This document shows, piece by piece, positions 27,270 to 59,096 of a DNA stretch of 64,000 bases; within the stretch, counting starts at the first letter, position 1; the number at the start of each line of letters is the position of its first letter. A program made the position numbers and the translations under genes. The notes under the pieces were generated by a model. It did no database searches. It was not told where the DNA came from and saw nothing but the letters and a program-made list of their open reading frames with translations. The stretch lies in IMG/VR virus record IMGVR_UViG_3300036770_006296, positions 62,001 to 126,000 of that record; one strand, 5' to 3'.

Positions 27270-27331
27270 GAATCATTTTTTTATTTAGGTAGATTTTTCT
27301 ATATTTATGATAACCAATTAAACTTCCAGTT

Positions 27332-27559
27332 ATGGAAATGAACTTCATTAAAGTTATAGACGAGAGAACAAGAGACACAGTAGGATTTGCTGTTGTTGAG
27401 AAAGGCTCTCTGGAAGAGTCAATGATAGTTGACCGCTTCATAGACGAGGGAATGATTTTTGTAGCCTCGAATGAAGAGGAATTTAGTAATTTTGATGGAG
27501 ACTTCGTGAAGAGGTTTGGTAATGGAATGTTTTGTACTCACGCACCAATGGCAGATTAA
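27332..27559 (+). CDS. hypothetical protein
   Basis: EP and leader. Confidence 0.7.
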   Translation: MEMNFIKVIDERTRDTVGFAVVEKGSLEESMIVDRFIDEGMIFVASNEEEFSNFDGDFVKRFGNGMFCTHAPMAD

Positions 27560-27560
27560 T

Positions 27561-27833
27561 ATGACAAATAACGAAAGAATAGAGGCTTTAATAGTTGATT
27601 TAGTTGCTAAGAGTCCTTCGCAGGTTAATGTATGTGATTTGTTAATCGACTACATTAAGACTTTAACAAAAGACGAGATTATTGAATTCGTTGACAGAAC
27701 TACAACTGAAGTTTGGCCAGCTAGGTTTGACGAAGAAAGAAGCGGGTGTTTACACAAGGAGACATATGCTGCTGTTCGTCACGAGTCCGGGATGGCTTTG
27801 TACCGATGTAAAAAATGTAACGCCAAGGTATAA
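27561..27833 (+). CDS. hypothetical protein with C-terminal Zn ribbon (start corrected)
   Basis: CLH...CKKC. Confidence 0.65.
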   Translation: MTNNERIEALIVDLVAKSPSQVNVCDLLIDYIKTLTKDEIIEFVDRTTTEVWPARFDEERSGCLHKETYAAVRHESGMALYRCKKCNAKV

Positions 27834-27873
27834 ATCATTTTTTTCTTTAGATAGAATTTTCTACATTTACAAT

Positions 27874-28164
27874 ATGGAAACATCAGTAATTATAACACCT
27901 AACCCTTATGGCTTCGGAAGGAACTGGAGCTTACTTGTTAAGACGCCAGAACACACCAAGAGTTTTTATCTTGGACAGGACGTAAAGTTTTGTTCGAGAG
28001 TTCTTGGTATGGAGCCAAGAGATGTCGTTGAGGCTATAGGTACTGGAGAGATCTCGGAAGGTCAACCAGGAAATAAGAAGCTCGCCGAGTTTATTTGTGA
28101 GTGTTTAGAATTAAATGAAACCAACGTCATGGAGTTAGAGCCATGGAGTTTAAGCGCAGAATAA
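27874..28164 (+). CDS. hypothetical protein (start corrected)
   Basis: ATG just after EP. Confidence 0.75.
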   Translation: METSVIITPNPYGFGRNWSLLVKTPEHTKSFYLGQDVKFCSRVLGMEPRDVVEAIGTGEISEGQPGNKKLAEFICECLELNETNVMELEPWSLSAE

Positions 28165-28165
28165 T

Positions 28166-28489
28166 ATGGAAAGGATATACGTAGCAATCATTAAAGGACC
28201 TAAGGAATATTTACCAGGAGGCATTAAGTTCGAGAAGTTCGAAATCCATCAACATGAGATAGACGACTTTTTAGAGGATGGCGAAGAGGGAGAGACCGAG
28301 GAGGATGCTATCCAATACTATAAGGAAGAGTATGCTGCGGAGTGGGAGCAACGATGGTGCTCAGTTACTTTCCTGAGTGAGTCTGAGTTTAATTCCCTCT
28401 ATGGAGCGGTTCAGGAATTCTTTATCGACAATGGGGATGACGGAGAAGAGGAAGAGCAAGAAGAAGACGAATGGCAAGATTGGAAGTAA
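28166..28489 (+). CDS. highly acidic protein
   Basis: E/D-rich throughout. Confidence 0.8.
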   Translation: MERIYVAIIKGPKEYLPGGIKFEKFEIHQHEIDDFLEDGEEGETEEDAIQYYKEEYAAEWEQRWCSVTFLSESEFNSLYGAVQEFFIDNGDDGEEEEQEEDEWQDWK

Positions 28490-28499
28490 ATTAAAAAAT

Positions 28500-28724
28500 A
28501 TGAGACAGGTAGATATTAAAATTTCTGGTAGGAAGATCGAAGGCTATCCTACAGTTACAAGAACTATAAAGTTCAATAACGTCGAAGAATTTATATCAAA
28601 GGCGGATGAAGCTATAGACGAAACTGATTTTGGTAAGGTTGATTGCTATGTCGATAACTTTGATAATGTATTTAACGATGAGGAGATTAAGCTTCTAGAG
28701 GAGCAATGGTTTATTATTGAATAA
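28500..28724 (+). CDS. acidic hypothetical protein (start corrected)
   Basis: MRQVDIKISG...; stop abuts EP. Confidence 0.7.
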   Translation: MRQVDIKISGRKIEGYPTVTRTIKFNNVEEFISKADEAIDETDFGKVDCYVDNFDNVFNDEEIKLLEEQWFIIE

Positions 28725-28764
28725 ATCATTTTTTTAATTAATTAGAATTTTCTATATTTGAGAT

Positions 28765-29256
28765 ATGGCAACAAGGAGTAGAATAGGAATAGTAAACGAG
28801 GACGGAACAGTTTCCTCAATATATTGTCACTGGGACGGATACGTATCTCACCACGGTCCACTCTTACTTACGCATTATACAGACCGTGAAAAGGTTAAAG
28901 CCCTTATCGAATTGGGAAGTATTAGTGTCTTAGCTCAACACGTTGAGCCGCCTTCAGTCGTTGACGAGAATGATATCGATGGTAAGAAGGGTGAGAGGAT
29001 GCTTAAGAGATTTGGAGTCATAGGAAAACATTCTTTCTACGATCCACTACCAGGTGTTACTGTTGCTTATCATCGAGACAGAGGAGAGGAATACATCAAA
29101 CCGAGAATTAATAAGTCGCTAGAGGATTATTTTCTAGCAGACAATGAAGAATATGGCTACGTCTTTACCCTTGAGGGTGAATGGCTAGTCAAGTCGGGGT
29201 ACAACGAAAGTGCTCCAATTAGACCAATCGCTGAGGTTTTAGCAGAAGAAACTTAG
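28765..29256 (+). CDS. conserved phage protein (TRSxIG...YCHWDGY) with internal KG-tag
   Basis: ...DGKKGERMLKRFGVIG... Confidence 0.8.
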   Translation: MATRSRIGIVNEDGTVSSIYCHWDGYVSHHGPLLLTHYTDREKVKALIELGSISVLAQHVEPPSVVDENDIDGKKGERMLKRFGVIGKHSFYDPLPGVTVAYHRDRGEEYIKPRINKSLEDYFLADNEEYGYVFTLEGEWLVKSGYNESAPIRPIAEVLAEET

Positions 29257-29462
29257 TGTTTAATTGGTTTAACGCTGAGGGGATCGAGAAATCGGTCCCT
29301 TTTTTTGTGTGCTGGTTTTTTTGCAGCATATGCTAGATTCCCGGGGGCTCCTCAGGAATCTCCCACGGTTGCGTGGTAATTTTTTTTAGAAATTTCTGGA
29401 AATCATTTTTTATATTACATAGAAGTTTCTACATTAGCTATGTAAATCAAAAAACGCTACCA

Positions 29463-29813
29463 ATGAAAAGCCATTGTACACACTGCGGAGCCATACATGA
29501 AAGAAAGAGTAAATTCTGCTCAAAGAAATGTAGCGATGCAGCCTACAGAGCCAGTAAGAAAGAGGAACCGATCGAGCCAAAGGCTTCAACATCCGACCCA
29601 GAAGTAGTGGTCGAGAAATTCACCAAAGCATTCGGTTTTCCTGTCAGACTATATTGGAACCGTAGGTTAGAGGGTAAGAACTCCTCTTGCGCTAAAGCCG
29701 GTACAGTACTCGAGTTCGAGCAGATAACAAAAGTGGGCGGCAAGGTGATCTACAGGGTAAGAAGGGGTAAGCGTAACTTCTTTACCTCAAGTCGAGAGAT
29801 TGAGGAAATTTAA
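29463..29813 (+). CDS. Zn-finger plus beta-rich C-terminal domain protein
   Basis: CTHCG...FCSKKC N-term; C-term homologous to 51704/55657/58436. Confidence 0.8.
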   Translation: MKSHCTHCGAIHERKSKFCSKKCSDAAYRASKKEEPIEPKASTSDPEVVVEKFTKAFGFPVRLYWNRRLEGKNSSCAKAGTVLEFEQITKVGGKVIYRVRRGKRNFFTSSREIEEI

Positions 29814-29907
29814 GAAAGCCATGGGGGCAAAAATAGCCTGGGTTAAACGCCCAGGCTTTTTTATGAAATCATTTTTTTAATTAAATAGAATTTTCTACAT
29901 TTACAAT

Positions 29908-30219: not shown

Positions 30220-30291
30220 TTTCCAAAATCATTTTTTTTATCAAGTAGAATATTCTACTTTAGCAATGTAAACCAATAAACACAAATAAAA

Positions 30292-33150: not shown

Positions 33151-33867
33151 ATGAAAATACTAGGATTTAATTTCCTTACTCTAAGACAGATAATATTTTT
33201 AAACGAGTTCACTTATGGCAAGTGGACTCTTAACAAGAAGACTGGACTGGTCGATATAGAAGGAGATTTCAATTGTTCAGATAAAAAATTAACCGGCTTT
33301 AAAGGTGTTCGGTTTGGAGTGGTTACTGGGAGTTTCTATTGTTACGATAACAATCTCACAAGTCTTGAGGGAGCGCCACAAAAGGTTGGATGGTATTTCG
33401 ATTGCTCCCATAACTCTCTCACAAGTCTTGAGGGAGCGCCACAGAATGTTGGGAGGGATTTCCGTTGCTACAATAACAAGCTCACAAGTCTTGAGGGAGC
33501 GCCGCAGAAGGTTGGATGGAGTTTCTATTGCCCATATAACAGGCTCACAAGTCTTGAGGGAGCGCCACAGGAGGTTGGAGGGTGTTTCTATTGCTACAAT
33601 AACTCTCTCACAAGTCTTGTGGGAGCGCCACAGGAGGTTGGAGGGAGTTTCGATTTCTACGGTAATCCGATCTCAGAGAAGACGTTAAAGTTGGTATGGG
33701 AGACGATGAGAGATAATAAGATCGACTATTGGTTTGCTTTATCGATACTTAAGAGCCAGATCGAGAGTGAGGATTGGAAGAAGATGTCTATAGGCTTAGA
33801 CGAGAGATTATCTAAAGACGCTCTGAAGGGTATTTCAATGATGGATCGGTTTGGACATTTTGATTAG
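33151..33867 (+). CDS. LRR-21 family protein with KG-tag
   Basis: 63-bp repeats FxCxxNxLTSLEGAPQxVG; ends KGISMMDRFGHFD. Confidence 0.9.
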   Translation: MKILGFNFLTLRQIIFLNEFTYGKWTLNKKTGLVDIEGDFNCSDKKLTGFKGVRFGVVTGSFYCYDNNLTSLEGAPQKVGWYFDCSHNSLTSLEGAPQNVGRDFRCYNNKLTSLEGAPQKVGWSFYCPYNRLTSLEGAPQEVGGCFYCYNNSLTSLVGAPQEVGGSFDFYGNPISEKTLKLVWETMRDNKIDYWFALSILKSQIESEDWKKMSIGLDERLSKDALKGISMMDRFGHFD

Positions 33868-38334: not shown

Positions 38335-38403
38335 ATTTCTGAATCATTTTTTTCTTCATATAGAAATTTCTATATTTGAGATAACCAATTAAATCAAATA
38401 GAA

Positions 38404-38684: not shown

Positions 38685-39119
38685 ATGACGAGTATATTTT
38701 TTATTCTAGCAGTATTCTTCTTTTTCTACGAGATCAGAGTAGCTTTAAACCCTTCTAAGTCCACAGCGAGGTTAAAGCAGCTTATGGATAAGGAAGAGTT
38801 TAAAAAAGCTAAGACGGATGACAAAATTGGAGGATGTCTTTTTGCACTCAATCAGATGTTCTATTTAACATGGACTATTATCGGTCTTGCCTTTGCCACC
38901 CAGTGGATATCATTCGCCTTACTATTTTTAATAAGCGTGATATCATGGTTAGTACAAAAGGCTTTCCGTATGAAATCACTAGATAATTCAAAAGTCGCAT
39001 TAGGCCTAAGATCCATTGACGCTTTATTATGTGCCTTTATAATCTTCGACATCTTCATGACTCATTTCCGGGGAGATGTTTGGGGAACAGGACTTGTCAG
39101 AATGCTGATTGGTTTATAG
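38685..39119 (+). CDS. membrane protein, ~4 TM
   Basis: Hydrophobic segments. Confidence 0.75.
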   Translation: MTSIFFILAVFFFFYEIRVALNPSKSTARLKQLMDKEEFKKAKTDDKIGGCLFALNQMFYLTWTIIGLAFATQWISFALLFLISVISWLVQKAFRMKSLDNSKVALGLRSIDALLCAFIIFDIFMTHFRGDVWGTGLVRMLIGL

Positions 39120-39292
39120 TTTGATTGATTAACAATAAGAGCCTAGGATTTTATCCTAGGCTTTTTTGTGTGCTAAGGTTTTGCAGCATATGCTAGATGC
39201 ACTGGGGAACCCCAGGAAGTTTAATCAGGAATCATTTTTTTCTTTAAGTAGAATTTTCTATATTAGCTAGGTAATCAATAAAACAAAAAGAC

Positions 39293-39889
39293 ATGCCTGG
39301 AATATTAATGGATCTAAGAAAATTAACGGAATACCAACCTTGGTTATTTAGAAACAAACACATGCAGCCAGTTATGGAAGCTCTTATGGAAGCACGTATA
39401 AATATCTTTAAGGACGAGGTACTATCCTCATTGAAAGGAGGTGATTCACTAACCGAGGATCAGATACGTATACTAGCCCTTTCTACCGATGCTTCTATTC
39501 ACATTAGGAAGGATGGAAAGATTAACGTGAATGGAATTTTTAACTGCTCTGGATTAGGACTAACTGATTTGTGTGGACTTCGATTTGGTAGAGTAAAAGG
39601 AAGATTTATTTGCAGAAATAATTCTATAACAAATCTTGAAGGGTTTCCTATTGAGGGAGATCCGGAGGTATTCTTTGACAGAAACAAAGGTATATCCGAC
39701 GGAACCTTAGATCTTATATTTGAAGCTATGAGAAAGAACCAAATGGACTATTGGTCGGCTTTATGTGTTGTTAAAAGCGAGATAGACTCTAAAGAATGGG
39801 TTGTTATGTCTAAAGGGATAGACGAGAGACTTTCACAAGACGCTCAGAAGGGAGCTTCGATGTTGGGACGATTTGGACATTTTGATTAA
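39293..39889 (+). CDS. minimal LRR-21 family member with KG-tag
   Basis: 1-2 repeats; ends KGASMLGRFGHFD. Confidence 0.85.
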   Translation: MPGILMDLRKLTEYQPWLFRNKHMQPVMEALMEARINIFKDEVLSSLKGGDSLTEDQIRILALSTDASIHIRKDGKINVNGIFNCSGLGLTDLCGLRFGRVKGRFICRNNSITNLEGFPIEGDPEVFFDRNKGISDGTLDLIFEAMRKNQMDYWSALCVVKSEIDSKEWVVMSKGIDERLSQDAQKGASMLGRFGHFD

Positions 39890-39929
39890 ATCATTTTTTT
39901 CTTTAAGTAGAATTTTCTACATTTATAGT

Positions 39930-40688
39930 ATGGAACTTAATAAAGAACAAATAGAATTTTTAAACGGGTTTACTAAAGGCAAATGGACTCTTAACAAGAA
40001 GACCGGACTAGTTGATATAGAGGGTTATTTTGATTGTTCATGTGAAGAATTAACCGATTTTAAAGGTGTTCGGTTTGGAGTGGTTACTGGGAGTTTCAAT
40101 TGCAGCGGTAACAATCTCAAAAGTCTTGAGGGAGCGCCACAAGAGGTTGGACTGGGTTTCGATTGCGACAATAACAATCTCAAAAGTCTTGTGGGAGCGC
40201 CACAGAAGGTTGGAGATTATTTCAATTGTTACTGGAACAAGCTCACAAGTCTAGTGGGAGCGCCACAAGAGGTTGGAGGGATTTTCGATTGTTCCAGTAA
40301 CAAGCTCACAAGTCTAGTGGGAGCGCCACAAGAGGTTGGAGAGATTTTCGATTGTTCCTATAACAAGCTCACAAGTCTAGTGGGAGCGCCACAGAAGGTT
40401 GGGCGTTTCGATTGTTGCTATAATAAGCTCACAAGTCTAGAGGGAGCGCCACAGAAGGTTGGGGAGGGTTTCTATTGCTACAATAACCCAATCTCGGAGA
40501 ATACTCTGAATTTAGTGTGGAACACTATGCAAGAAAAAAAGATCGACTACTGGTCGGCTTTATGTATTCTTAAGAGTGAAATCTCAAGGAGTGATTTCGA
40601 GAATTTAGAGGGAGAGTTGGAAAAGAGACTTTCACAAGACGCTCAGAAGGGGGTTTCTATGTTGGGACGGTTTGGACATTTTGATTAA
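39930..40688 (+). CDS. LRR-21 family protein with KG-tag (start corrected)
   Basis: ~6 repeats; ends KGVSMLGRFGHFD. Confidence 0.9.
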   Translation: MELNKEQIEFLNGFTKGKWTLNKKTGLVDIEGYFDCSCEELTDFKGVRFGVVTGSFNCSGNNLKSLEGAPQEVGLGFDCDNNNLKSLVGAPQKVGDYFNCYWNKLTSLVGAPQEVGGIFDCSSNKLTSLVGAPQEVGEIFDCSYNKLTSLVGAPQKVGRFDCCYNKLTSLEGAPQKVGEGFYCYNNPISENTLNLVWNTMQEKKIDYWSALCILKSEISRSDFENLEGELEKRLSQDAQKGVSMLGRFGHFD

Positions 40689-41082: not shown

Positions 41083-41158
41083 AATAATTTCAGGAATCAT
41101 TTTTTATATTAAATAGAATTTTCTACTTTAGCTACATAAACCAATTAAATCTTTTAAC

Positions 41159-41581
41159 ATGGCTGAAAAAAATCAAACAATCACAGGAGGACTCGGCATT
41201 CGGGAAGGCTATTTCGAAGTTGCTCAAGAACGAGTCGTTAAAAAACTTAAAGACCTCGACACCATCTCTGATGCGTTAGAGGCAGTTGCGGAAGAGATCC
41301 GGGACGAGGAGTTCGGAGAGTCTAATCTTCGAGTATCTGATTACGAGAAAAAGCTTATTTTGTCGGGATTCATTATGGGATGTGTTCGCTCAGAAGCTCA
41401 GATGTCGCAAAAGCTCGACGAGCTAAAAATGATGTTTCATCTTATGGCGATGAGTAAGCAGGTCGGCACGAACAAAGACGGAAGTCCTATCTTAGGAGGT
41501 ATGATCGACGCTAAAGATATGCCGAAGGAGCTTCGAGATCTTTTAGAAAAATTATCAGGCGAGGATGACGAAGACGATTAA
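41159..41581 (+). CDS. hypothetical protein
   Basis: EP upstream. Confidence 0.75.
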   Translation: MAEKNQTITGGLGIREGYFEVAQERVVKKLKDLDTISDALEAVAEEIRDEEFGESNLRVSDYEKKLILSGFIMGCVRSEAQMSQKLDELKMMFHLMAMSKQVGTNKDGSPILGGMIDAKDMPKELRDLLEKLSGEDDEDD

Positions 41582-41711
41582 TTGGTTAAGGTGAGCAACC
41601 CGAGGGGGAAATAGGATGCCTCCTCGGGTTTTAGAAATTTCCAAAAATCATTTTTTTAATTAGAATAAAATTCTTATATTAGCTAAGTAAATCAATTAAA
41701 GATATAGAGAT

Positions 41712-44182: not shown

Positions 44183-44512
44183 ATGAAAGATAAGGATATA
44201 CTAGCGAGAATAAAAGAACTATCAAATGAAGATTGGTTCCAGAACGGTGATGATTCACCGGAAGAGGTCTACGAGGAGCTTTACGGGATAGAAGCTGAAA
44301 ACGATGATCTTGCATATCTTCTCGAGTTAACTATTGGTGGACCGGGATACTCGGATGTTTGGCTTTCACGAGGTGTACTTATAGGAGATGTGCTTGCTTA
44401 CGGAGATGGATTAGAAGAGGGTGAGGAAGTTACTGAGGATGATATCTACGAAGATAATCAAATGTTTATTGCGGAAAGAAGAATGGGTTTACTTGATGAA
44501 ATAATTTTGTAA
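44183..44512 (+). CDS. highly acidic protein
   Basis: E/D-rich. Confidence 0.75.
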   Translation: MKDKDILARIKELSNEDWFQNGDDSPEEVYEELYGIEAENDDLAYLLELTIGGPGYSDVWLSRGVLIGDVLAYGDGLEEGEEVTEDDIYEDNQMFIAERRMGLLDEIIL

Positions 44513-45372
44513 TGGGATTAACTAAAGATCAAATAGAATGGCTAAATAGCTGCCACGGATGGGCTGGTCTAAAAAAGACTAAATGGACATTTAACGAAGA
44601 AACCGGACTAGTAGACGTAGAGGGTGATTTTATAACCCCCAATTCATATGGTTCTTGTAAAGCTTTAGGACGGAAAGGAGGTGGTGGATATGGAGGTATT
44701 AAGGATTTTATGGGTATTAAATTCGGTACTGTTACTGGGACCTTCGATTGCTCGTATAACAATCTAACAAATATAGAGGGAGCGCCTATTTACGTAGGAG
44801 GGGATTTCGATTGCTCATATAACAAACTCACAAGCTTAGTGGGAGCACCACAAGAAGTTGGAGGTTCCTTCAGTTGTATAGATAATAATCTCACAAGTCT
44901 TATTGGATCTCCTCGAAGGGTTAAGCTTCACTTCCACTGTGCTTATAACAAACTACCAAATCTAGTAGGAGCTCCTATGTACGTGGGAGGGGATTTCTGG
45001 TGCACTGATTTATCCAATGATCTACATATAGAAAGTCTGCACGGAGCAGAAGAATGTATAATAGGTGGAGATTTCGATTGTCATTACAACAAATTGAAAG
45101 ATTTAAAAGGTGCTCCTAGATTAATTTACGGTCAATTTATGGTCTATGGTAATTACGAAGGAAATTACAAAAGAGTTAAAAAAGATACATTCATTCTAAT
45201 AACTAGTACAATGAAAGAAAAAAATCTAGACTATTTTGGCGCTTTGTGCTTATTAAAAGATTCCCTCGATAAGAAGGAATGGAATAAGTTATCTAAAGGT
45301 ATAGACGAAAGATTGTCGAAAGAAGCCCAGAAGGGTCTTAGAATGTTGGACAAGTTTAAAATTTTTGAATAA
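44512..45372 (+). CDS. LRR-21 family protein with KG-tag
   Basis: GDFDCSYNKLTSLVGAP repeats; ends KGLRMLDKFKIFE. Confidence 0.9.
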   Translation: MGLTKDQIEWLNSCHGWAGLKKTKWTFNEETGLVDVEGDFITPNSYGSCKALGRKGGGGYGGIKDFMGIKFGTVTGTFDCSYNNLTNIEGAPIYVGGDFDCSYNKLTSLVGAPQEVGGSFSCIDNNLTSLIGSPRRVKLHFHCAYNKLPNLVGAPMYVGGDFWCTDLSNDLHIESLHGAEECIIGGDFDCHYNKLKDLKGAPRLIYGQFMVYGNYEGNYKRVKKDTFILITSTMKEKNLDYFGALCLLKDSLDKKEWNKLSKGIDERLSKEAQKGLRMLDKFKIFE

Positions 45373-47754: not shown

Positions 47755-47777
47755 GTAACCAATTAAAAATTAGAGTA

Positions 47778-49312: not shown

Positions 49313-49777
49313 ATGGATAATAAAGTTTTTGTTCTCTCTTATTACAATGGATATTATGATGAGTGGAAAAAGAAAAAAACCTATTCAAACTATAACGAAG
49401 TCCTGAAATTTTTATGGAAAAAATTTACTAAATCAACGAAGAAAGACTTTTATGGGAATCCAATGGAACCTGAAGTAAACAGTTATACTTTTGAGGATAC
49501 TATTTATTGTAGTTATCTTGAAAGTACCGAAGAGGGAGCTGAAATTCTCAAAAAATCGAATTCTTGGAAAGAATTTTTAGAAGCTATAAAAGATGTTGAT
49601 TGTATAGAATCTTTCTGCTTGGACGAATTTTCTTCTAAAGATAAAGCGATAGTTGGTGAGGTAGGAGACGGAATTGAAATAAGTCAAGCTCAGATTTTAT
49701 TAGACCTTGATCTATCCGAAGGACTTAATAACCTATATGATTTTAATAAATTCAAAAAGAATTATTTGTCTTGTTAA
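49313..49777 (+). CDS. hypothetical protein, paralog of 61536..62153 without CTS
   Basis: ILKKSNSWKEFL and ISQAQILLD motifs. Confidence 0.8.
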   Translation: MDNKVFVLSYYNGYYDEWKKKKTYSNYNEVLKFLWKKFTKSTKKDFYGNPMEPEVNSYTFEDTIYCSYLESTEEGAEILKKSNSWKEFLEAIKDVDCIESFCLDEFSSKDKAIVGEVGDGIEISQAQILLDLDLSEGLNNLYDFNKFKKNYLSC

Positions 49778-49794
49778 TCAATTAAAATAATATC

Positions 49795-49986: not shown

Positions 49987-50074
49987 AATAATTTCAATTA
50001 TTTTTCAGAATCATTTTTTTATTCATGTAGAAATTTCTATATTTGTAATGTTAATCAATTAAACAAAAACAATT

Positions 50075-50920
50075 ATGAAACATCACATTTTTCAGCAATC
50101 AGTTACAGGACGTAACGAAGTAGTAGACGCTTACCTAAGCGAAATCAACAAAATCTCGATGGTCAATCCGGACGAGGAAAAAGTTCTTTGCGACCGTATC
50201 ATCTCTGGCCAGAATGGCTTAGACGAAAAGGCTCGTCAAAGATTTGTCGAGGGCAACTTAAGATTTGTCGTATCGGTTGCGAAACAGTACCAAGGTTCGG
50301 GACTAGAGTTAATGGACTTAATCAACGAAGGGAATGTCGGCTTAGTTAAAGCTTCCCAACTATTCGACCCGACCAGAGGTATACGTTTCATCTCATTTGC
50401 AGTTTGGTGGGTTCGCCAGGCAATCATGGAGTCGCTAAAAGAGAAAGGGCGTTTGGTAAAACTCCCTCTAAATCAAATCAACGCTCAAAAGAAAATCTCC
50501 CGTGAAATGGACCAAATCCTAAAGACGGAAGGGTTCACATCGGTTGACTTGGCAGCGGCTTCTTTAGGACTCGAGCCGGAAAAATACCAAACACAATCTT
50601 CAGTTTCGCTAAGTACACCTATCGGAGAAGAAGACTTCACACTAGGCGATACTCTATCAGACGGAACAGTTTCAGATGAGGGATTAGAAAAACTAAGTTT
50701 TATCAAACAGATATCCGCAGTACTTAAAACGTTAGAGGAAAGAGAAAGCTTCGTAATCTCTAACTGGTTCGGAGTCAACGGTCAGTCACAAAGACCAAAA
50801 AGCGATATTGCAAAAGACCTCGGAATCTCAGAAGAGCGAGTAGAACAAATCTACCACAAAGCAATTCGCAAACTCAAAGCTTCTAACCGCTCTCGCCTAC
50901 TAAAACATTTTGTTTCATAG
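50075..50920 (+). CDS. RNA polymerase sigma70 factor, Bacteroidota RpoD/SigA-like
   Basis: NLRFVVSVAKQY, DLINEGNVGL, FDPTRG.RFISFAVWWVRQAI; region 4 HTH. Confidence 0.93.
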   Translation: MKHHIFQQSVTGRNEVVDAYLSEINKISMVNPDEEKVLCDRIISGQNGLDEKARQRFVEGNLRFVVSVAKQYQGSGLELMDLINEGNVGLVKASQLFDPTRGIRFISFAVWWVRQAIMESLKEKGRLVKLPLNQINAQKKISREMDQILKTEGFTSVDLAAASLGLEPEKYQTQSSVSLSTPIGEEDFTLGDTLSDGTVSDEGLEKLSFIKQISAVLKTLEERESFVISNWFGVNGQSQRPKSDIAKDLGISEERVEQIYHKAIRKLKASNRSRLLKHFVS

Positions 50921-51161
50921 GTTTGGTTGATTAACAAAAAGAGAGGAGACTTCGGTCTCCTTTTTTTGTGGACCTAAGTTTATTATCCAGTGAATGATAA
51001 ATCCCCAGAGGTACCCCAGGATCTGGATTTATAACCTGTAATATTGGATTTACATTAAAATAATAATGGGGTCCTCACCAGGGGGCCACGCACGCGTAGG
51101 GTATTTTAGAATAAACCACAAATCATTTTTTAGTTTAGTTAAGATTACTTATATTAGCTAT

Positions 51162-51485: not shown

Positions 51486-51703
51486 TAGTTTGATTGATTA
51501 ACAGGAAAAGGTCGGATTCGCATCCGGCCTTTTTCGTGCTCCAAGGTTTGCTGGATGTTGGCTGGAAGATGCACTGGGGAACCCCAGGAGCTTTAGGCCT
51601 GCCTGGAATTATTTTTAGAAATTTCTATTTTTTTCTAAGAATCATTTTTTTCTAAGTAGAAAAATCCATATATTAGCTAAGTAACCAATTAAATTATTTA
51701 TTT

Positions 51704-53253: not shown

Positions 53254-53490
53254 ATGAAGAAGGGAGATAGAATTAAGGTGACATTTACCAAAGACACATT
53301 ACTAGTTGTATACCCAAAGTCAGACAAGCGTTATAGGGAAGGGTGTGAAGAAATGTTTTTGGAGGGACAAACATTAGAATTTGAGATCTTAGAAATCAAG
53401 AACGAAGGTGAGACTATAGAAGTTAAATTTCTTAGCGAGCTTTATTCAATCCATTACATGGGAGTTATAAGTAATATTATTTTTGTTTGA
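53254..53490 (+). CDS. hypothetical protein
   Basis: EP upstream; 3' end overlaps an inverted gene. Confidence 0.6.
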   Translation: MKKGDRIKVTFTKDTLLVVYPKSDKRYREGCEEMFLEGQTLEFEILEIKNEGETIEVKFLSELYSIHYMGVISNIIFV

Positions 53491-53662
53491 GTTCTTCAAT
53501 AAAATTCAATATACTTTCCTCACCATCAATTGTTTTAACCGAGTCATCTAGATAAATAACAACAATTCTTGGCGGTAAATCGTTCTCCATAAATGATTGA
53601 ATTTTTTCTATTCCTTTAGCATCTAATATTGTTTCATCAATATCTTTTAAATAATCTTTCAT
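53477..53662 (-). CDS. hypothetical protein in inverted cassette
   Basis: Own TATATTTG promoter (~53711-53718, - strand) and A-rich leader. Confidence 0.7.
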   Translation of the reverse strand: MKDYLKDIDETILDAKGIEKIQSFMENDLPPRIVVIYLDDSVKTIDGEESILNFIEELKQK

Positions 53663-53931
53663 AATTTTCTTTTTTAATTGTTAAACAAAAATAATACATA
53701 CTTATAACAACAAATATAAGAAATAAATCTTACTTTGTCTATTTTTTAATGAAAAGATTTACTTCTCATATTTGCAACCGATAAAACTTTTTTATTCCCT
53801 TCTGGGTTTAAAAATAATGATACGCATGGGAGAAGACAGTATTTTAAAATTATCTAAAATCCCAAGGAATCATTTTTTTCTTTAGATAGAATTTTCTACA
53901 TTTGTATCGTAACCACTAAAAAATAAAAAAA

Positions 53932-54297: not shown

Positions 54298-54383
54298 AAA
54301 AAGAATTAAAAAGATTTGGAATCATTTTTATTATTGTAGAAGAATCCATATATTAGCTAAGTAAATCAATTAAACAAAATCAA

Positions 54384-54560
54384 ATGGAAAAACTAGCAGC
54401 AAAAATTAATCTAATTGTTGTAGCACTACTCGTTTTATCAGCAGCAGCGATCTTCTTCATCTCAGTGGTAAGAGGAGATTTAATAATTGGTATCATCGGA
54501 GGAGCATTAACTTGGATAGGAATACAAATCTTAAAAATCACAATCAATGAATCAGCGTAA
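54384..54560 (+). CDS. 58-aa two-TM peptide, not in track
   Basis: MEKLAAKINLIVVALLVL...; EP upstream. Confidence 0.65.
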   Translation: MEKLAAKINLIVVALLVLSAAAIFFISVVRGDLIIGIIGGALTWIGIQILKITINESA

Positions 54561-54768
54561 ACCAAACAAAACACTAGGAGACCTATACGTTGAGGTTGTC
54601 CTGGTAATAGGGATACCCTTAGGAATAGTAGCACTACTCAACTGGCTGACCCTATAATATAACGGGGTCCCCACCCGGAGGCCGCGTGCCTACGTGCGTA
54701 CGTGAGGAATAAATCAGAAAAAAACGGAATCATTTTTTTAACCAGAGCATTTTAGATACATTTACCTC

Positions 54769-55056
54769 ATGAACACTTACAAATTTAGAGCAGAATGCCT
54801 TCACGATGTGATACAATTCATGAGTCATGCTCCAGAGGTAATACAACAGATAGATGTACAAAAGGATGAAAGGTTTCCTGATTGCTATGTCACTCTTAAA
54901 ACCACCTCAGAGATGTCAGAAGTACTAAATAAAATACTTGAAATGCAAGGAGACGTTCACGTTATGTTTGAGAGTCTTCAACCAGAAGGGGAATACACAG
55001 GAGAAAGAATAAGAAGCTTTCATTCATCATCAAAAGACAACTTCATGGAGAAGTAA
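54769..55056 (+). CDS. hypothetical protein
   Basis: EP upstream. Confidence 0.75.
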   Translation: MNTYKFRAECLHDVIQFMSHAPEVIQQIDVQKDERFPDCYVTLKTTSEMSEVLNKILEMQGDVHVMFESLQPEGEYTGERIRSFHSSSKDNFMEK

Positions 55057-55294
55057 AAAAGACTATTCTGTGATTAGTTTAGTTTGATTAACACCCAAGA
55101 TAGGGATTCGGCTTCGGCTCGGATCCCTTTTTTGCGAGCCGAGGTTTTTTGACCTGGCCTGGATTAATCTCTGGGGAACCCCAGGAATCCTGATCCAGCA
55201 GATGTAAGAGAAGTGTAAACTTTTTTCAGAAATCATTTTTATTCCTGTAGAAAATTCTATATATTTGTATTGTTAATCAATCAAACAAAAATAA

Positions 55295-55444
55295 ATGAAA
55301 GCAGAAACAAAAAAGAAATTAGAATTCTTAATGGAATTAGGTTTAACCCAAAATGAAATTAATGAACTTCTAGATAATCAATCTATTCTTGATGAATCAA
55401 AAGAATTCAAAAAAGAAGAAGTTGAAGAAGATGAAGATTACTAA
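55295..55444 (+). CDS. 49-aa acidic peptide, not in track
   Basis: MKAETKKKLEFLMELG...EEDEDY; EP upstream, terminator downstream. Confidence 0.7.
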   Translation: MKAETKKKLEFLMELGLTQNEINELLDNQSILDESKEFKKEEVEEDEDY

Positions 55445-55656
55445 GGGGTTAGTAATAAAAAAGGGAAGGAGACTTAGGTCTCCTTTTTTTGTGGGGAAAA
55501 TCTAGACCAGCTAGATGCTCCTGCGGTGCCCCAGGAATCCTGATCCAAACCCCAATAAATTTTTTTTAGAAAATTCCACTTTTTTCCAAGAATCATTTTT
55601 TATATTAGAATATTCTACATATATTTGTATAGTTAATCAATTAAACAATATCAATT

Positions 55657-55968
55657 ATGAAAAAGGAAATGACAGCAGAACAAAAAGCAAAAAAGGCGGC
55701 AGCTAACAAGGCGTACAGAGAGCGCAAAAAAATGCAATCTCAAAACTGGATGGAACTCGACAAGTTCGAAATGAGTTTCGAGCATAAAGTTCGACTTTTC
55801 AAAAACCTCAAATTGGAAATCACAAATTCCTATTGCGCATCTCCGGGGACAGTTTTGAAATTTGAAAAACTCACTAATAACGATAACACAATCGTTTATC
55901 GGGTTCGCCGCACAGGTCGAAGAACTTTCTTCACCACCTCCGTCCACCTTCACGCTCCCGCTGAATAG
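55657..55968 (+). CDS. basic protein family member 2
   Basis: Near-identical to 51704..52006. Confidence 0.85.
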   Translation: MKKEMTAEQKAKKAAANKAYRERKKMQSQNWMELDKFEMSFEHKVRLFKNLKLEITNSYCASPGTVLKFEKLTNNDNTIVYRVRRTGRRTFFTTSVHLHAPAE

Positions 55969-56093
55969 CCGGGACTCACCATAGAAAGGAGCTTAGGCTC
56001 CTTTTTTTGTGCCCAAAGGTTTCTGGATGTAGGCTGAGATAAACTCCTGGGGCTCCTCAGGAAATTTTCACATCTTCCTTATCTATAAGATTT

Positions 56094-56198
56094 ATGGAAG
56101 AGATAGATAAAATAAAAAGATGGGGTTGTATAGGAATAGTATTCATTACTATCCTATGGACTTCACTTATCTACTGGGCATTGTCCAAAGCATTCTGA
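56094..56198 (+). CDS. 34-aa TM peptide, not in track
   Basis: MEEIDKIKRWGCIGIVFITILWTSLIYWALSKAF between two palindromes. Confidence 0.45.
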   Translation: MEEIDKIKRWGCIGIVFITILWTSLIYWALSKAF

Positions 56199-56304
56199 GG
56201 ATCCTCCGAGAATCCCAGCTGGCCCAGAAATAATAATCAGGAATCATTTTTTTATTTGTGGAAAAATCTATATATTAGCTTGTTAATCAATTAAACAAAA
56301 GCCA

Positions 56305-56460
56305 ATGTATTCTTTAGATTGTGATTATTACACAAAACAATTCCCATCCATCGATGATCTCATATCGGATATTATATCATCTGGCATGGACCCAAATTAT
56401 GTAATAACCTATAATGGTGTACCCATAGGTTATCAAGCTATTGAGCTAATTCAATTTTAA
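56305..56460 (+). CDS. 51-aa protein, not in track
   Basis: MYSLDCDYY...QAIELIQF; paralog of next ORF. Confidence 0.75.
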   Translation: MYSLDCDYYTKQFPSIDDLISDIISSGMDPNYVITYNGVPIGYQAIELIQF

Positions 56461-56517
56461 GAAATCATTTTTTTCTTCAAATAGATTTTTCTACATTTAC
56501 ATTATAAAACAAATTTT

Positions 56518-56757
56518 ATGTATTCATTAGACTGTGATTACTACAAAAAAGAATTCTCAACCCTTGATGAACTCTTGGACGATATTATACTATCTGGTAT
56601 GGACCCAAATTATTTAATAACATACAATGGGGCCACCTTCAACTACCAAGCTATTGAACTAATAACTGGACGTATGAGCCAGCATTTCCCGAATGTTAAC
56701 ATTACCAAAGAACTCATGATGACATTTTGCAGTTGGGTAAAGTCCCGGAAGAATTAA
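56518..56757 (+). CDS. paralog of 56305 with new C-terminus from an insertion
   Basis: 17-bp direct repeat at 56647-56663 and 56759-56775. Confidence 0.75.
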   Translation: MYSLDCDYYKKEFSTLDELLDDIILSGMDPNYLITYNGATFNYQAIELITGRMSQHFPNVNITKELMMTFCSWVKSRKN

Positions 56758-56845
56758 TCAAGCTATTGAACTAATTCAATTTTAAGAAATCATTTTTTTC
56801 TTCAAATAGATTTTTCTACATTTACATTATAAAACAAAGACCTAC

Positions 56846-57076
56846 ATGTTAATTTACACAATAATTTTTACCCTAGCTCTCTTGGTCCTAATAGCTACAA
56901 AAACGACAGGGATTGACCAACCCACACTAGATTATAAAGAGAGCTATGCAGCGGAGGTGAGTAATGCCAGCTACTTTACTCTGCCTCGAGGACAGCCCAG
57001 TAGATTGTGGGCTTCTATCATAACAAATAAATCACCGCCCCGTAACAAGGGTAAGCCCGGATATAATACAAGTTAA
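56846..57076 (+). CDS. small signal-peptide/TM protein
   Basis: Hydrophobic N-term; EP upstream. Confidence 0.6.
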   Translation: MLIYTIIFTLALLVLIATKTTGIDQPTLDYKESYAAEVSNASYFTLPRGQPSRLWASIITNKSPPRNKGKPGYNTS

Positions 57077-57204
57077 AGAAAGACCCTTATTACAGGGTCT
57101 TTTTTGTGGACTATTGTTTACAATAAACCTCCTATTGTAAACCACTGGGGCTCCGCAGGAAAATCAAGAAGAAGATAAGATATATATAGTATAAAAAACA
57201 AATT

Positions 57205-57645
57205 ATGAAACATATTAGGCTTTACGAATACTATTCTGAATTACCAACTTCATTCAGTGTAGCAGAGATCCAAAACATGTCGGAGACGGACTTTTTAACA
57301 AACCTTAAAATGTTAAAAGATAAGGGAGACGAAGAGCAGGCTTTTTCGTTATTACAAATTTGGATGAATCACCATAAAGATGCGGCGAACGACATGGATT
57401 TCAATGCGAAACTCGGAGGTATATTTCGTGACGTTTCTCTTGAATCAGATGACAGCCCTAAGTCTGGCAATTTCCTTCATGATAAAGCAGTGCAATTGAA
57501 CACTTATCTTGCTAAGAACAAACGTGAAGGCGTGGTAAAACAAATAGAAGAGGTAAAAAGAAATATAAAAAATTACGAAGAAATGCTTAGAGTGGCTAAA
57601 GATAGATTAGATAGATTAGAATTTGAAATGACAAAAACTATGTAA
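57205..57645 (+). CDS. CTS-bearing coiled-coil protein
   Basis: MKHIRLYEYYSE; LP at 57179. Confidence 0.8.
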   Translation: MKHIRLYEYYSELPTSFSVAEIQNMSETDFLTNLKMLKDKGDEEQAFSLLQIWMNHHKDAANDMDFNAKLGGIFRDVSLESDDSPKSGNFLHDKAVQLNTYLAKNKREGVVKQIEEVKRNIKNYEEMLRVAKDRLDRLEFEMTKTM

Positions 57646-57871
57646 TTTGAATTCATATAATAATAAGAAAGACTCTTAGGAGTCTTTTTTTGTGATCTAA
57701 ACCACTGGGGCTCCGCAGGAAATCCAATGGTAGATGTGATTTATACTCTCATGCCCCCTCCGGGGGGACGCGTGCGTACGTATGCACGCGTAGGCACTTT
57801 TTTCAGGAATCGTTTTTTTATCTGTAGAAAATTCCATACATTAGCTATGTTAATCAATTAAATAAATACAA

Positions 57872-58006
57872 ATGGAAAAGGCAGTAAATGTTTTAGCAGC
57901 AATTTGGGTAGGTGTTTTAATGTCAATGACAATCATCTCATTAGGCTATGCAATAGTTCAAGTTGTAACCGGCAATGTACATTCCACAGCAAGTTTTGAA
58001 TTTTAA
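57872..58006 (+). CDS. 44-aa TM peptide, not in track
   Basis: ...WVGVL...QVVTGNVHSTASFEF; paralog of 59097. Confidence 0.7.
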   Translation: MEKAVNVLAAIWVGVLMSMTIISLGYAIVQVVTGNVHSTASFEF

Positions 58007-58171
58007 ATGAAAACAACAATCACAAAAGAAGCCCTAAGAAAAGCCAGAATGGGCTCAGTAAGAGAAGACCAGAAAGCACAAGGTTTCTTTGATGGTAGAT
58101 TTGTAACAAGATGTGAGGAAGACAAAAAGAAATACACAAGAAAAGAGAAACACAAATCTAAATCCTACTAA
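58007..58171 (+). CDS. 54-aa basic peptide, ArfA-like C-terminal pattern
   Basis: GFFDGRFVTRCEEDKKKYTRKEKHK. Confidence 0.6.
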   Translation: MKTTITKEALRKARMGSVREDQKAQGFFDGRFVTRCEEDKKKYTRKEKHKSKSY

Positions 58172-58435
58172 ACAAAAACAAAATCTTTTAAACCCTAGGT
58201 TCGGCCTAGGGTTTTTTTGTGGGCTAAAAATCCCAAGCTATGGTAAATCCTCCGAGGCACCCCAGGAACTTTTCCATAGATTTATTTTTTATATTTCTCT
58301 ATTTCTCCCATGCGGCACCCCAGAGTAACCCTATAAATTTTTTTTAGAAATTTCCACTTTTTTCCAAGAATCATTTTTTAGTTTGTAGAAAAGTCTATAT
58401 ATTAGCTAAGTTAATCAATTAAACAAAAACAAATT

Positions 58436-58753
58436 ATGAAAAACACAGAAAAAAAACCAGTTGCTAAAAAAGCTACAAAAACCACTAAAGTTTCTAACAC
58501 CCCTGATTGGATGACTTTGGACAAGTTCGAAATGAGTTTCACCCACAAAGTTAGATTATTTAGAAATCTAAAATTGGAAACCACAAACTCCTACTGTGCA
58601 AGCCCAGGGACTTCCCTAAAGTTTGAAAAAATCAAAAATGAAGATAATACAATTGTCTTCCGGGTTCGCCGCAATGGCCGCCGCACCTTCTTCACCACCA
58701 ACGCGGAACTCCAGGCGCCAGCTGAAATCCCCGCTGAAATCCCCGCTGAATAA
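58436..58753 (+). CDS. basic protein family member 3
   Basis: DWMTLDKFEMSF...CASPGTSLKFE...RTFFTT. Confidence 0.85.
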   Translation: MKNTEKKPVAKKATKTTKVSNTPDWMTLDKFEMSFTHKVRLFRNLKLETTNSYCASPGTSLKFEKIKNEDNTIVFRVRRNGRRTFFTTNAELQAPAEIPAEIPAE

Positions 58754-58896
58754 CCGGGGTTTCACAAAACTTCAAAAGACCCTTCGGGGTCTTTTTTTGT
58801 GACCAAATTTTAGGACAGATCCTAATCCTCCTGAGGCACCCCTGGAACTTTACCATATATTCAGTTTTTATATTTAAAAAAAATTCTTATATTTGT

Positions 58897-58958
58897 AGTT
58901 CATAAAATATTTATTCTTTGGAGTAAGCCAGGAACCCTAGATTTATCTAGGGTTTCTT
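58897..58958 (+). ncRNA. candidate small RNA, copy 1
   Basis: TATATTTG 58888-58895, ORF-less body, terminator 58930-58958. Confidence 0.5.
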
Positions 58959-59096
58959 GTGTGTAAAGAAATCTAGATCTATGGTAAATCTCCTGCGGAA
59001 CCCCAGGAAAAGAATCCAAAAAGATTCAAGAAATCGTTTTTATCTTTGTAGAAAAATCCATATATTTATATAGTTAATCAATTAAACAAAATAAAA

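What the first reader, a model, noticed from the sequence alone, without database searches (positions are those of the whole stretch)
27312..59090. Conserved 5' leader motif and its reverse complement placed just before terminators
Seen: leaders carry GT(T/A)A(T/C)CAAT(T/C)AAAC (e.g. 50050, 55272, 56282). 3' UTRs carry GTTTGATTGATTAAC (39119, 51488; exact complement of 55272-55286), GTTTGGTTGATTAAC (50921) and GTTTAATTGGTT (29258; complement of 27312-27323). In the sigma gene, 50921-50935 pairs 15/15 with its own leader 50050-50064 using two G.U pairs, and TGTTTCAT (50911) matches its ATGAAACA start. Inference: end-to-end mRNA panhandles or 3'-UTR-derived sRNAs that control early translation or stability. 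Alternative: relics of inverted gene starts, as at 53670.
Basis: partly seen in the sequence, partly recalled or inferred. Interest (0 to 1): 0.7.

Follow-up and report, generated by a model that had tools for sequence, protein, structure and literature searches.

The report
Phage mRNA leader and 3′ anti-leader
In an uncultivated 207-kb phage (host probably Bacteroidota), the first 15 bases of many early mRNAs form a shared leader. A few genes, above all the phage sigma-factor gene, carry its conserved reverse complement between stop codon and terminator, so the two mRNA ends are predicted to pair, as in the known icaR and hok cases.

Summary
The 15-mer GTTAATCAATTAAAC and its looser form GTAACCAATTAAA begin at the predicted +1 of about 50 copies of one conserved phage promoter.

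The reverse complement lies between stop codon and terminator at 29258, 39119, 41576, 50921 and 51488, with a weaker copy at 55077. Five of 26 terminators carry it against 0.10 expected, and none carries the forward form.

It is not a relic. It stays after orthologous genes in more than 30 metagenomic relatives (67-97% sigma identity). In those relatives only 14% of fourfold sites are invariant and the terminator stems covary.

For the sigma mRNA, folding of about 900 nt pairs leader with anti-leader in all 16 orthologs folded (P 0.66-0.94). In most of the main clade the start-codon region also pairs with the last codons, giving 20-25 bp. The synonymous sites there are invariant.

Most one-sided changes are G·U-compatible. 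No double compensatory change was seen, and an own-versus-other pairing test was not significant.

Two genes with leaderless promoters also keep an anti-leader, so pairing within one mRNA cannot be told from pairing between mRNAs.

Verdict: this is an RNA-level leader/anti-leader element. The sigma panhandle is the best case, its function is inferred, and it is a new variant of known 5′-3′ UTR pairing.

The parts
50009..50049 (+). Promoter of the sigma gene, one of about 50 copies of the family AATCATTTTTTT-N-TAGAAnnTTCTAyATTTG. The -7 box TATATTTG puts +1 at 50050.
   Evidence: The box lies at -12 to -5 in Flavobacterium (PMC9723704).
50050..50064 (+). 5' leader GTTAATCAATTAAAC, the first 15 nt of the predicted sigma mRNA and the 5' strand of helix 1.
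   Evidence: It is invariant in the main clade of relatives.
50065..50072 (+). A-rich spacer AAAAACAA, predicted as an unpaired bulge. It varies in sequence and length among relatives.
50073..50082 (+). UUAUGAAACA, the 5' strand of helix 2, which includes the start codon 50075-50077.
   Evidence: Codons 2 and 3 are nearly invariant.
50075..50920 (+). Sigma-70-family gene, 281 aa, with regions 1.2, 2, 3 and 4.
   Evidence: Pfam and PHROG 351. The nearest cellular homologs are Bacteroidota RpoD at about 44%.
50911..50920 (+). UGUUUCAUAG, the last codons plus the stop, and the 3' strand of helix 2. GTT-TCA-TAG is invariant at its synonymous sites.
50921..50935 (+). Anti-leader GTTTGGTTGATTAAC, the 3' strand of helix 1. 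It pairs 15/15 with 50050-50064 using two G·U pairs.
50936..50967 (+). Intrinsic terminator of the sigma gene: A-tract, GGAGAC-UUCG-GUCUCC, then U7. The stem covaries in relatives.
51488..51502 (+). Anti-leader GTTTGATTGATTAAC after the gene next to sigma. That gene's promoter at 51121 gives a leaderless mRNA. The motif is unchanged in seven relatives and differs by one base in an eighth (L068).
   Evidence: The terminator is at 51510-51534.
39119..39133 (+). Anti-leader GTTTGATTGATTAAC after the membrane-protein gene 38685-39119. The G of the stop codon TAG is its first base. The terminator is at 39137-39167.
   Evidence: It fits its own leader at 38380-38394 poorly.
41576..41591 (+). Anti-leader GATTAATTGGTTAAGG with the stop codon TAA (41579-41581) inside it. 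It follows gene 41159-41581, whose partner leader is 41136-41151. The terminator is at 41599-41632.
   Evidence: It is invariant in 6 loci.
29258..29273 (+). Anti-leader GTTTAATTGGTTTAAC after gene 28765-29256, with the terminator at 29279-29306. It is complementary to the leader at 27309-27323, the nearest leader-bearing promoter of the same terminator-free unit.
27309..27323 (+). Leader GATAACCAATTAAAC at the +1 of promoter 27271.
55077..55092 (+). Weaker anti-leader-like element GTTTAGTTTGATTAAC, 20 nt after the stop of gene 54769-55056 and before the terminator at 55102-55133. It is conserved in relatives.
54361..59462 (+). Cluster of T-type leaders at +1 of promoters, all within one mismatch of GTTAATCAATTAAAC: 54361, 55272, 55632, 56282, 57849, 58410, 59073, 59448. 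Several of them precede very small ORFs.
25553..25579 (+). A different, CAAA-rich leader, AGAAACAAACAACAAACAAACGACTAT. Its unit ends with the complementary TTTGTTTTGTTTGTTC at 26269-26284, right after a stop codon and before the terminator at 26294-26322.
   Evidence: The duplex energy is -15.1 kcal/mol.
47755..47769 (+). Promoter-less intercistronic copy of the leader motif, directly after a stop codon and 8-11 nt before the next ATG. A second such copy is at 49775-49787.

Best explanation
The leader is the 5'-terminal 15 nt of many early mRNAs of this phage. It is A/U-rich, has no Shine-Dalgarno sequence, and also occurs between cistrons just before start codons. The anti-leader is its RNA complement, kept on the same strand between stop codon and terminator of a few genes.

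In the finished transcript the two pair. The 5' end is then held in a duplex that abuts the terminator hairpin. In the sigma mRNA the start codon is also paired, with the last codons (20-25 bp in all, with one A-rich bulge).

I infer that this lowers or gates translation initiation and/or alters mRNA decay, by protecting the ends or by creating a double-strand RNase site, as shown for icaR in Staphylococcus aureus. Because all early mRNAs share the leader, the same 3' ends could also act on other leader-bearing mRNAs.

Shown here: the anatomy, the enrichment, the conservation and the predicted pairing. Inferred: that the pairing occurs in the cell, and what it does.
For: Position and orientation:
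- The leader starts at the predicted +1. The -7 box TAnnTT(T/A)G plus 4 nt gives that position, and leaderless variants start exactly at the ATG (PMC9723704).
- Anti-leaders are enriched before terminators: 5/26 against 0.10 expected, with none forward. The same holds in the independent relative G001 and in the loci L063 to L069.
- All copies lie inside the transcript, inverted, and within 0-3 nt of the stop codon. The weaker copy at 55077 is the exception, at 20 nt.

Conservation:
- The genes carrying the element are not paralogs.
- The sigma anti-leader is kept in about 30 loci at 67-97% protein identity.
- The copy after the neighbouring gene is kept in 8 relatives, unchanged in 7, and the one after gene 41159 is invariant in 6 loci, while their terminator stems change.
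- Only 8 of 57 fourfold sites are invariant in the same clade.

Pairing:
- Departures from the exact complement are mostly A-to-G, which gives G·U pairs. One AAA-to-AAG change on the 5' side is also a wobble change.
- Folding of the full sigma mRNA pairs 11-15 of the first 16 nt with the anti-leader in all 16 orthologs folded (mean P 0.66-0.94). Helix 2 appeared in five of the six main-clade orthologs whose start-codon pairing was examined.
- Duplex energies are -18 to -25 kcal/mol in the main clade.
- GTT-TCA-TAG is invariant at its synonymous sites, and the bulge between the helices is variable.
- Other leader-bearing units give P 0.54-0.84.
- One unit with a different CAAA-rich leader ends in a matching GTTT-rich tract.
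Against: - No pair changes on both sides. The leader is nearly invariant, so covariation cannot be scored.
- A permutation of own against other 5'/3' duplex energies over all units is not significant: p 0.22 in this genome and 0.08 in G001.
- Leader type (C or T) against anti-leader type (G or A) gives about 2 incompatible combinations in 10 groups. My rough estimate from leader and anti-leader type frequencies was about 2.8 by chance.
- The anti-leader after gene 38685 fits its own leader poorly in this genome and in L067 (P 0.14 and 0.01).
- The gene after sigma has a leaderless or non-canonical 5' end in all eight loci, yet keeps its anti-leader unchanged in seven of the eight relatives (one base differs in L068). 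Gene 54769 also has a leaderless promoter of its own.
- One lineage (L083, L093) carries a C·A mismatch in mid-helix. L067 lacks helix 2. L092 lacks the anti-leader.
- About 80% of terminators have no anti-leader.
- No RNA ends or structure data were available.
- The ends of long RNAs tend to pair in folding programs.
Confidence: 0.55

Rival explanations
1. The anti-leader acts between mRNAs. The anti-leader plus terminator hairpin, either as part of the mRNA or cut off as a 3'-UTR-derived small RNA, pairs with the shared leader of other early mRNAs. Likely targets are the T-type leaders of sigma and of the small genes at 54-59.5 kb. The effect would be to shut down or tune that class of genes.
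For: - The gene after sigma is leaderless or has another leader in all loci, yet keeps its anti-leader unchanged in seven of eight relatives (one base differs in L068).
- Three unrelated genes in this genome, and their orthologs in relatives, carry the same version GTTTGATTGATTAAC. It is the exact complement of the leader at 55272 and pairs at about -19 kcal/mol with all T-type leaders.
- Own pairs are not better than cross pairs overall.
- A seed followed by a terminator hairpin and a U-tail is the usual shape of 3'-UTR small RNAs. This last point is from general knowledge.
Against: - No processing site, internal promoter or RNA evidence was found.
- The sigma-specific second helix, with invariant synonymous sites around the start and stop codons, makes sense only within one mRNA.
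- C-type anti-leaders sit in units with C-type leaders at 29258 and 41576 and in the G001 units Y1, Y3 and Y5.
Confidence: 0.25
2. The motif is a double-stranded DNA site for a phage or host protein, such as a repressor bound at +1 to +15. The inverted copies near gene ends would be auxiliary operators or roadblocks. The complementarity at RNA level would then be a by-product.
For: - The motif overlaps the transcription start of about 30 promoters, a classical operator position.
- The T-type core TTAAT-CA-ATTAA is partly palindromic. This is read directly from the sequence.
Against: - The commonest form, TAACCAATTAAA, is not palindromic beyond AATT.
- Anti-leaders differ from the leader consensus at positions where leaders are at least 85% T. 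Their reverse complement has C there, which weakens a DNA site but keeps G·U pairs.
- All copies are upstream of the terminator, on one strand and in one orientation. A DNA site does not require this.
- Promoter-less intercistronic copies sit before start codons.
- Leaderless promoters of the same family work without the motif.
Confidence: 0.1
3. The element has no function through pairing. It would be a relic of inverted gene starts or of module shuffling, or simply a spacer rich in stop codons (TGA, TGA and TAA in the three frames) that keeps ribosomes off the terminator.
For: - GTTTGATTGATTAAC closes all three reading frames. This is read directly from the sequence.
- The region is a mosaic of repeated promoter/terminator modules, as in T4-type phages (PMC2839356, PMC4122927).
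- A real inverted gene start with a leader-like motif exists at 53670.
Against: - Conservation is far above the neutral level in more than 30 relatives.
- There is no promoter or conserved ORF on the minus strand at these sites.
- Most other terminators have spacers of similar length with unrelated sequence.
- The window's own sigma variant, GTTTGGTTGATTAAC, lacks the second in-frame stop codon that the common version provides.
Confidence: 0.05

Closest known systems
icaR mRNA 5'-3' UTR pairing in Staphylococcus aureus (PMC3868564)
   Same: A motif in the 3' UTR is complementary to the translation-initiation region of the same mRNA. In icaR the pairing blocks the initiation complex and makes an RNase III substrate. 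The gene regulated is a transcription regulator.
   Different: - The icaR 3' UTR is long and pairs with a Shine-Dalgarno sequence. Here the 3' UTR is about 20 nt, the target is the extreme 5' end of a leader without a Shine-Dalgarno sequence, and in sigma also the start codon.
- Here the leader is shared by dozens of transcripts and the anti-leader recurs at several unrelated genes.
- Nothing has been tested experimentally here.
hok mRNA fold-back inhibition, the 5'-3' pairing of plasmid R1 hok/sok
   Same: The full-length mRNA is closed by pairing of its very 5' end with its 3' end, which keeps it translationally inert and stable.
   Different: - hok is activated by 3' trimming and is controlled by an antisense RNA. 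No sign of either is seen here.
- hok is a single toxin gene and not a set of phage early genes.
3'-UTR-derived small RNAs of enterobacteria, for example CpxQ and SroC (cited from my own knowledge)
   Same: A seed sequence lies directly 5' of the mRNA's own terminator hairpin, so it could act on other mRNAs.
   Different: No processing or separate RNA species has been shown. The host group is different and has no known Hfq-type system tied to such RNAs.
PeSL promoter-terminator cassettes of T4-type phages (PMC2839356, PMC4122927)
   Same: Many near-identical early-promoter and stem-loop modules lie between small, variable genes in a plastic early region. Gene content between modules differs among relatives.
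   Different: - PeSLs are described as recombination points.
- I saw no mention in those papers' abstracts of a conserved transcribed leader with an inverted copy in front of the terminator.
- The promoter here is of the Bacteroidota type.
Cyclization sequences and panhandles of RNA viruses, such as flavivirus 5'/3' CS and the orthomyxovirus panhandle (cited from my own knowledge)
   Same: Conserved complementary termini bring the two ends of a viral RNA together.
   Different: Those are genome replication signals of RNA viruses. Here the RNAs are mRNAs of a DNA phage.

Membership tests
cis 5'-3' UTR pairing regulators (icaR type) | The complementary segments lie in the 5' and 3' untranslated parts of one transcript. 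| tested here: met
   Sigma: 50050-50064 and 50921-50935 lie between the predicted +1 and the terminator. The same holds for 41136/41576, 27309/29258 and 25553/26269. The transcript ends are predicted, not mapped.
cis 5'-3' UTR pairing regulators (icaR type) | The pairing covers the translation-initiation region. | tested here: met
   In five of the six main-clade sigma orthologs whose minimum-energy structure was examined, the structure pairs AUGAAAC with GUUUCAU and pairs the 5' leader. This is a prediction only.
cis 5'-3' UTR pairing regulators (icaR type) | The pairing is supported by covariation or compensatory mutants. | tested here: inconclusive
   Only one-sided, mostly wobble-compatible changes were seen, with no double change. 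The own-versus-cross permutation gave p 0.22 and 0.08.
cis 5'-3' UTR pairing regulators (icaR type) | The pairing changes protein output or mRNA decay. | not testable with these tools
   This needs reporter, toeprint or RNase assays.
3'-UTR-derived small RNAs | A separate stable RNA species is made from the 3' end by processing or from an internal promoter. | tested here: inconclusive
   The metatranscriptome contigs are sparse and show no ends. No internal promoter of the phage family was seen just upstream.
3'-UTR-derived small RNAs | A conserved seed lies next to the terminator and has complementary targets elsewhere. | tested here: met
   The invariant GTTTGATTGATTAAC lies 3-8 nt before the hairpin. 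About 10 T-type leaders pair with it at -15 to -19 kcal/mol.
PeSL-type promoter/terminator cassettes | A repeated composite of early promoter plus stem-loop lies between variable small genes. | tested here: met
   The + strand of the genome carries 54 promoter-family matches, most of them between window 23,000 and 60,200, together with terminators and a conserved block after the terminators. Gene content differs among relatives.
PeSL-type promoter/terminator cassettes | The cassettes serve as recombination break-points. | not tested
   I made no break-point analysis.
Known RNA families (Rfam 15) | A match to a curated covariance model. | tested here: not met
   No match at gathering score in window 26000-61000.

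The most novel reading that the evidence does not exclude
The early mRNAs of this phage lineage would be closed loops. The anti-leader lies at most 3 nt from the stop codon in five of the six copies, so it sits under the footprint of a terminating ribosome. In the sigma mRNA the stop and start codons are paired with each other.

The closed form would then couple termination to re-initiation, or time the translation of each transcript. It would be a bacterial-virus counterpart of eukaryotic mRNA circularisation, evolved in a host whose ribosomes do not use Shine-Dalgarno pairing. The shared leader/anti-leader code would also let a few abundant 3' ends regulate the whole early class.
Probability: 0.1. 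Interest if true: 0.85.

Novelty: new variant of a known kind. Interest (0 to 1): 0.6.

Why it matters
End-to-end pairing of bacterial mRNAs is known from only a few single genes, such as icaR and hok. Here one 15-nt code is shared by dozens of phage transcripts, and its complement is kept at chosen genes, including the phage's own sigma factor.

The element is conserved across a widespread group of freshwater jumbo phages whose hosts appear to lack Shine-Dalgarno-based initiation. In such hosts mRNA structure is the main tuner of initiation (PMC6847099).

If confirmed, it would be a simple, portable way for a phage to set the translation or lifetime of key early mRNAs. It would also give a handle for expression control in Bacteroidota, and a case where the choice between action within one mRNA and action between mRNAs can be tested with a few mutants.

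The promoter, leader and leaderless architecture found here also gives a ready annotation rule for this uncultivated phage group.

Tried and rejected
The pattern as typed gives 0 hits because it is one letter short.
- **Phage GenBank search.** A nucleotide search found nothing near.
- **Distant sigma homologs.** Those at 28-43% identity (L002-L010, L020-L022) lack the motif or lack an anti-leader, so they give no information.
- **Relative G003.** It is close to this genome, but the contig ends before the early region.
- **Metatranscriptomes.** Only sparse Logan contigs were available, at depth 2-6 and without direction. Some span the terminators, which could be read-through or DNA. No ends could be called.
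- **Paralogy.** Paralogy of the genes carrying anti-leaders is rejected.
- **Downstream-leader pairing.** I considered pairing of the anti-leader with the next leader downstream in read-through RNA, a stem enclosing terminator and promoter as in T7 RNase III sites. It is mostly weaker than pairing with the unit's own leader, and inconsistent.
- **Type matching.** The leader C/T against anti-leader G/A test does not differ from chance.
- **Genome-wide permutation.** The own-versus-cross duplex test is not significant.
- **Distant phage sigma genes.** The same test on 43 distant genes gave p 0.001. I reject it as confounded by each locus's own G+C content.
- **Antisense gene or promoter.** None at the anti-leader. 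Only an 11-codon ORF, and no -7 box (sequence).
- **Palindromic operator.** Only the T-type core is partly palindromic.
- **16S rRNA resemblance.** The resemblance of GTTTAATT to a 16S rRNA segment is recalled from memory only and was not tested.
- **Rfam and tRNA scans.** Both found nothing.

Full report
**What the window is.** The window is bases 62,001-126,000 of a single 206,617-bp virus record with 35% G+C. Window 23-60 kb is a block of small + strand genes.

A sigma-70-family gene lies at 50075-50920. Pfam finds regions 1.2, 2, 3 and 4, and it matches PHROG 351. Its closest cellular homologs are Bacteroidota RpoD at about 44% identity.

Phage relatives at 67-97% identity are common in freshwater-lake metagenomes.

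**The leader.** About 50 intergenic regions carry one promoter-like block: AATCATTTTTTT, 6-8 nt, TAGAAnnTTCTAyAT, then TTG or TAG. This block contains the Bacteroidota -7 box TAnnTTTG. In Flavobacterium psychrophilum that box lies at -12 to -5 (PMC9723704).

Counting from the box, +1 falls on the G of GTTAATCAATTAAAC or GTAACCAATTAAA. In about ten promoters it falls on the A of an ATG, which gives leaderless mRNAs.

No Shine-Dalgarno sequence is visible in these leaders. This fits a Bacteroidota host, where initiation is tuned by mRNA structure and A-rich contexts (PMC6847099).

The motif also occurs without a promoter, between cistrons, directly after a stop codon and 8-11 nt before the next ATG, at 47755 and 49775. 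So it is tied to translation starts and not only to +1.

The same promoter and leader occur in four other IMG/VR contigs of 130-248 kb.

**The observation.** The typed pattern is one letter short. The true 15-mer has 30 hits at up to 3 mismatches against 6.3 expected.

With a weight matrix from 27 leaders, the five best reverse-orientation hits in the genome are 29258, 39119, 41576, 51488 and one true minus-strand gene start. The hit at 50921 scores lower because of its two G's.

All of the reverse copies lie between a stop codon and a terminator hairpin, 0-3 nt from the stop. At 41576 the stop codon is inside the motif. A weaker copy lies at 55077, 20 nt after a stop.

In the early region, 5 of 26 terminators have such an element within 40 nt upstream. 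Random windows give 0.10, and none of 20,000 draws reached 5. No terminator has the forward motif. The distant relative G001 shows the same pattern, 5 of 31.

**Not a relic.** The genes in front of the anti-leaders are unrelated to each other.

The element is kept after orthologous genes in relatives:
- After sigma in about 30 loci.
- After the gene next to sigma in eight relatives, unchanged as GTTTGATTGATTAAC in seven and one base different in L068.
- After gene 41159 in six loci, as GAT-TAA-TTGGTTAA.
- After gene 38685 in five loci.

In the same sequences the terminator stems change by compensatory substitutions. Only 8 of 57 fourfold-degenerate sites of the sigma gene are invariant.

No promoter box and no conserved ORF lies on the opposite strand.

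**RNA or DNA.** Several facts point to RNA:
- All copies are inside the transcript, on the sense strand and inverted.
- Read as leaders, the anti-leaders carry C at two positions where real leaders have T in 23/27 and 24/27 cases. In RNA these are G·U pairs.
- The commonest leader form is not palindromic.

A DNA operator is therefore a weak rival.

**The sigma mRNA.** Folding the predicted transcript of about 900 nt pairs 11-15 of its first 16 nt with the anti-leader in all 16 orthologs folded. The mean pairing probability is 0.66-0.94.

In five of the six main-clade orthologs examined for it, the minimum-energy structure also pairs (UU)AUGAAAC(A) with (U)GUUUCAU(AG). In the window this gives 25 contiguous paired bases on the 3' strand (50911-50935), opposite 50050-50064 and 50073-50082, with an 8-nt A-rich bulge. 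Duplex energies in the main clade are -18 to -25 kcal/mol.

The bulge varies in sequence and length among relatives, while both helix strands are nearly fixed. The last codons GTT-TCA-TAG are invariant in 19 distinct coding sequences, although neighbouring Leu, Ser, Arg and Lys codons vary freely.

One-sided changes are mostly wobble-compatible. They are A-to-G at anti-leader positions 5 and 6, and AAA-to-AAG in L086.

The exceptions are:
- a C·A mismatch in L083 and L093;
- loss of helix 2 in L067;
- a weaker helix in the L088-L091 clade;
- no anti-leader in L092.

No pair changes on both sides, so there is no true covariation.

**Other units.** With the nearest leader taken as the 5' end, predicted 5'-3' pairing has P 0.54-0.84 for gene 41159 (four genomes), the 27309-29273 unit, four units of G001 and G002, and one of L068. 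It fails for gene 38685 in this genome and in L067.

A unit with a different CAAA-rich leader (25553) ends in a matching GTTT-rich tract right after its stop codon (26269), at -15.1 kcal/mol.

Against a purely within-mRNA model:
- The gene after sigma is leaderless, or has another leader, in all eight loci, yet it keeps its anti-leader.
- Gene 54769 has a leaderless promoter of its own, although a T-type leader (54361) lies upstream in the same terminator-free unit.
- Because all leaders are alike, own pairs are not better than cross pairs: p 0.22 here and 0.08 in G001.
- Leader and anti-leader types do not match beyond chance.

**Direct RNA evidence.** Lake metatranscriptome runs hold parts of the region, but only as sparse assembled contigs without ends or direction. 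Rfam has no match.

**Conclusion.** The best reading is an RNA-level leader/anti-leader pairing.

The sigma mRNA panhandle is well supported by anatomy, conservation, synonymous-site constraint and folding. It is unproven, and its effect on translation or stability is inferred by analogy with icaR (PMC3868564) and with hok (from my own knowledge).

A trans role of the same 3' ends is a live rival and may coexist with the cis role. The surrounding array of promoter/terminator modules resembles the PeSL cassettes of T4-type phages (PMC2839356, PMC4122927).

I rate this a new variant of a known kind.

Noticed in passing
window 23,000-60,200, + strand (for example 50009-50049): About 50 copies of one promoter family carry a Bacteroidota-type -7 box. 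Some ten of them place +1 on the ATG and so give leaderless mRNAs, for example at 27833, 28724, 29867, 39889, 51121, 52112 and 54720. The same family occurs in four other large IMG/VR contigs.
   Followed up: partly
14 copies between 29344 and 58266 (for example 39204-39216, 51576-51588): The motif GGGGAACCCCAGG, or G(A/G)GG(A/C/T)(A/T)CC(C/T)CAGG, lies 30-60 nt after most terminators, which are themselves followed by TTTTTTGTG(G/T)GC. In relatives its fourth base varies without compensation, so it may be a protein site and not a hairpin. Its function is unknown.
   Followed up: partly
58884-58921 and 59258-59295, with about 100 nt after each: Two direct repeats each carry a host-type -7 box (TTATATTTG) followed by a short region ending in the hairpin AACCCTAGAT..ATCTAGGGTTT. 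They are possible small RNA genes.
   Followed up: no
genes ending at about 58006 and 59228 (C-terminal TASFEF motif at 57989-58006 and 59211-59228); also G001 186698-186835: Paralogous very small hydrophobic peptides ending in TASFEF sit behind T-type leaders. In G001 the paralog's stop codon is followed by a long GTTT-rich tract before the terminator.
   Followed up: partly
53477-53662, minus strand: This is the only minus-strand ORF in the block (61 aa). It has its own host-type promoter and a leader-like GTTTAACAATTAAAA. It has no homolog in the relatives L059-L069, so it is probably a recent insertion.
   Followed up: yes
56,400-56,850: A local duplication covers a gene end plus promoter (CAAGCTATTGA.CTAATTCAATTTTAAGAAATCATTTTTTTCTTCAAATAGATTTTTCTACATTTACATTATAAAACAAA). 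It is flanked by paralogous small genes that begin MYSLDCDYY.
   Followed up: no
33151-33867, 39873-40688, 44512-45372: These paralogous proteins have faint leucine-rich-repeat matches. They share a conserved internal DNA stretch (..GGTGTTCGGTTTGGAGTGGTTACTGGGAG..) that produces weak false anti-leader hits.
   Followed up: no
L063 18125-18844 (relative): A second, shorter sigma-70-family gene (239 aa) lies about 9 kb downstream of the first in a relative. I did not check whether this genome has it.
   Followed up: no
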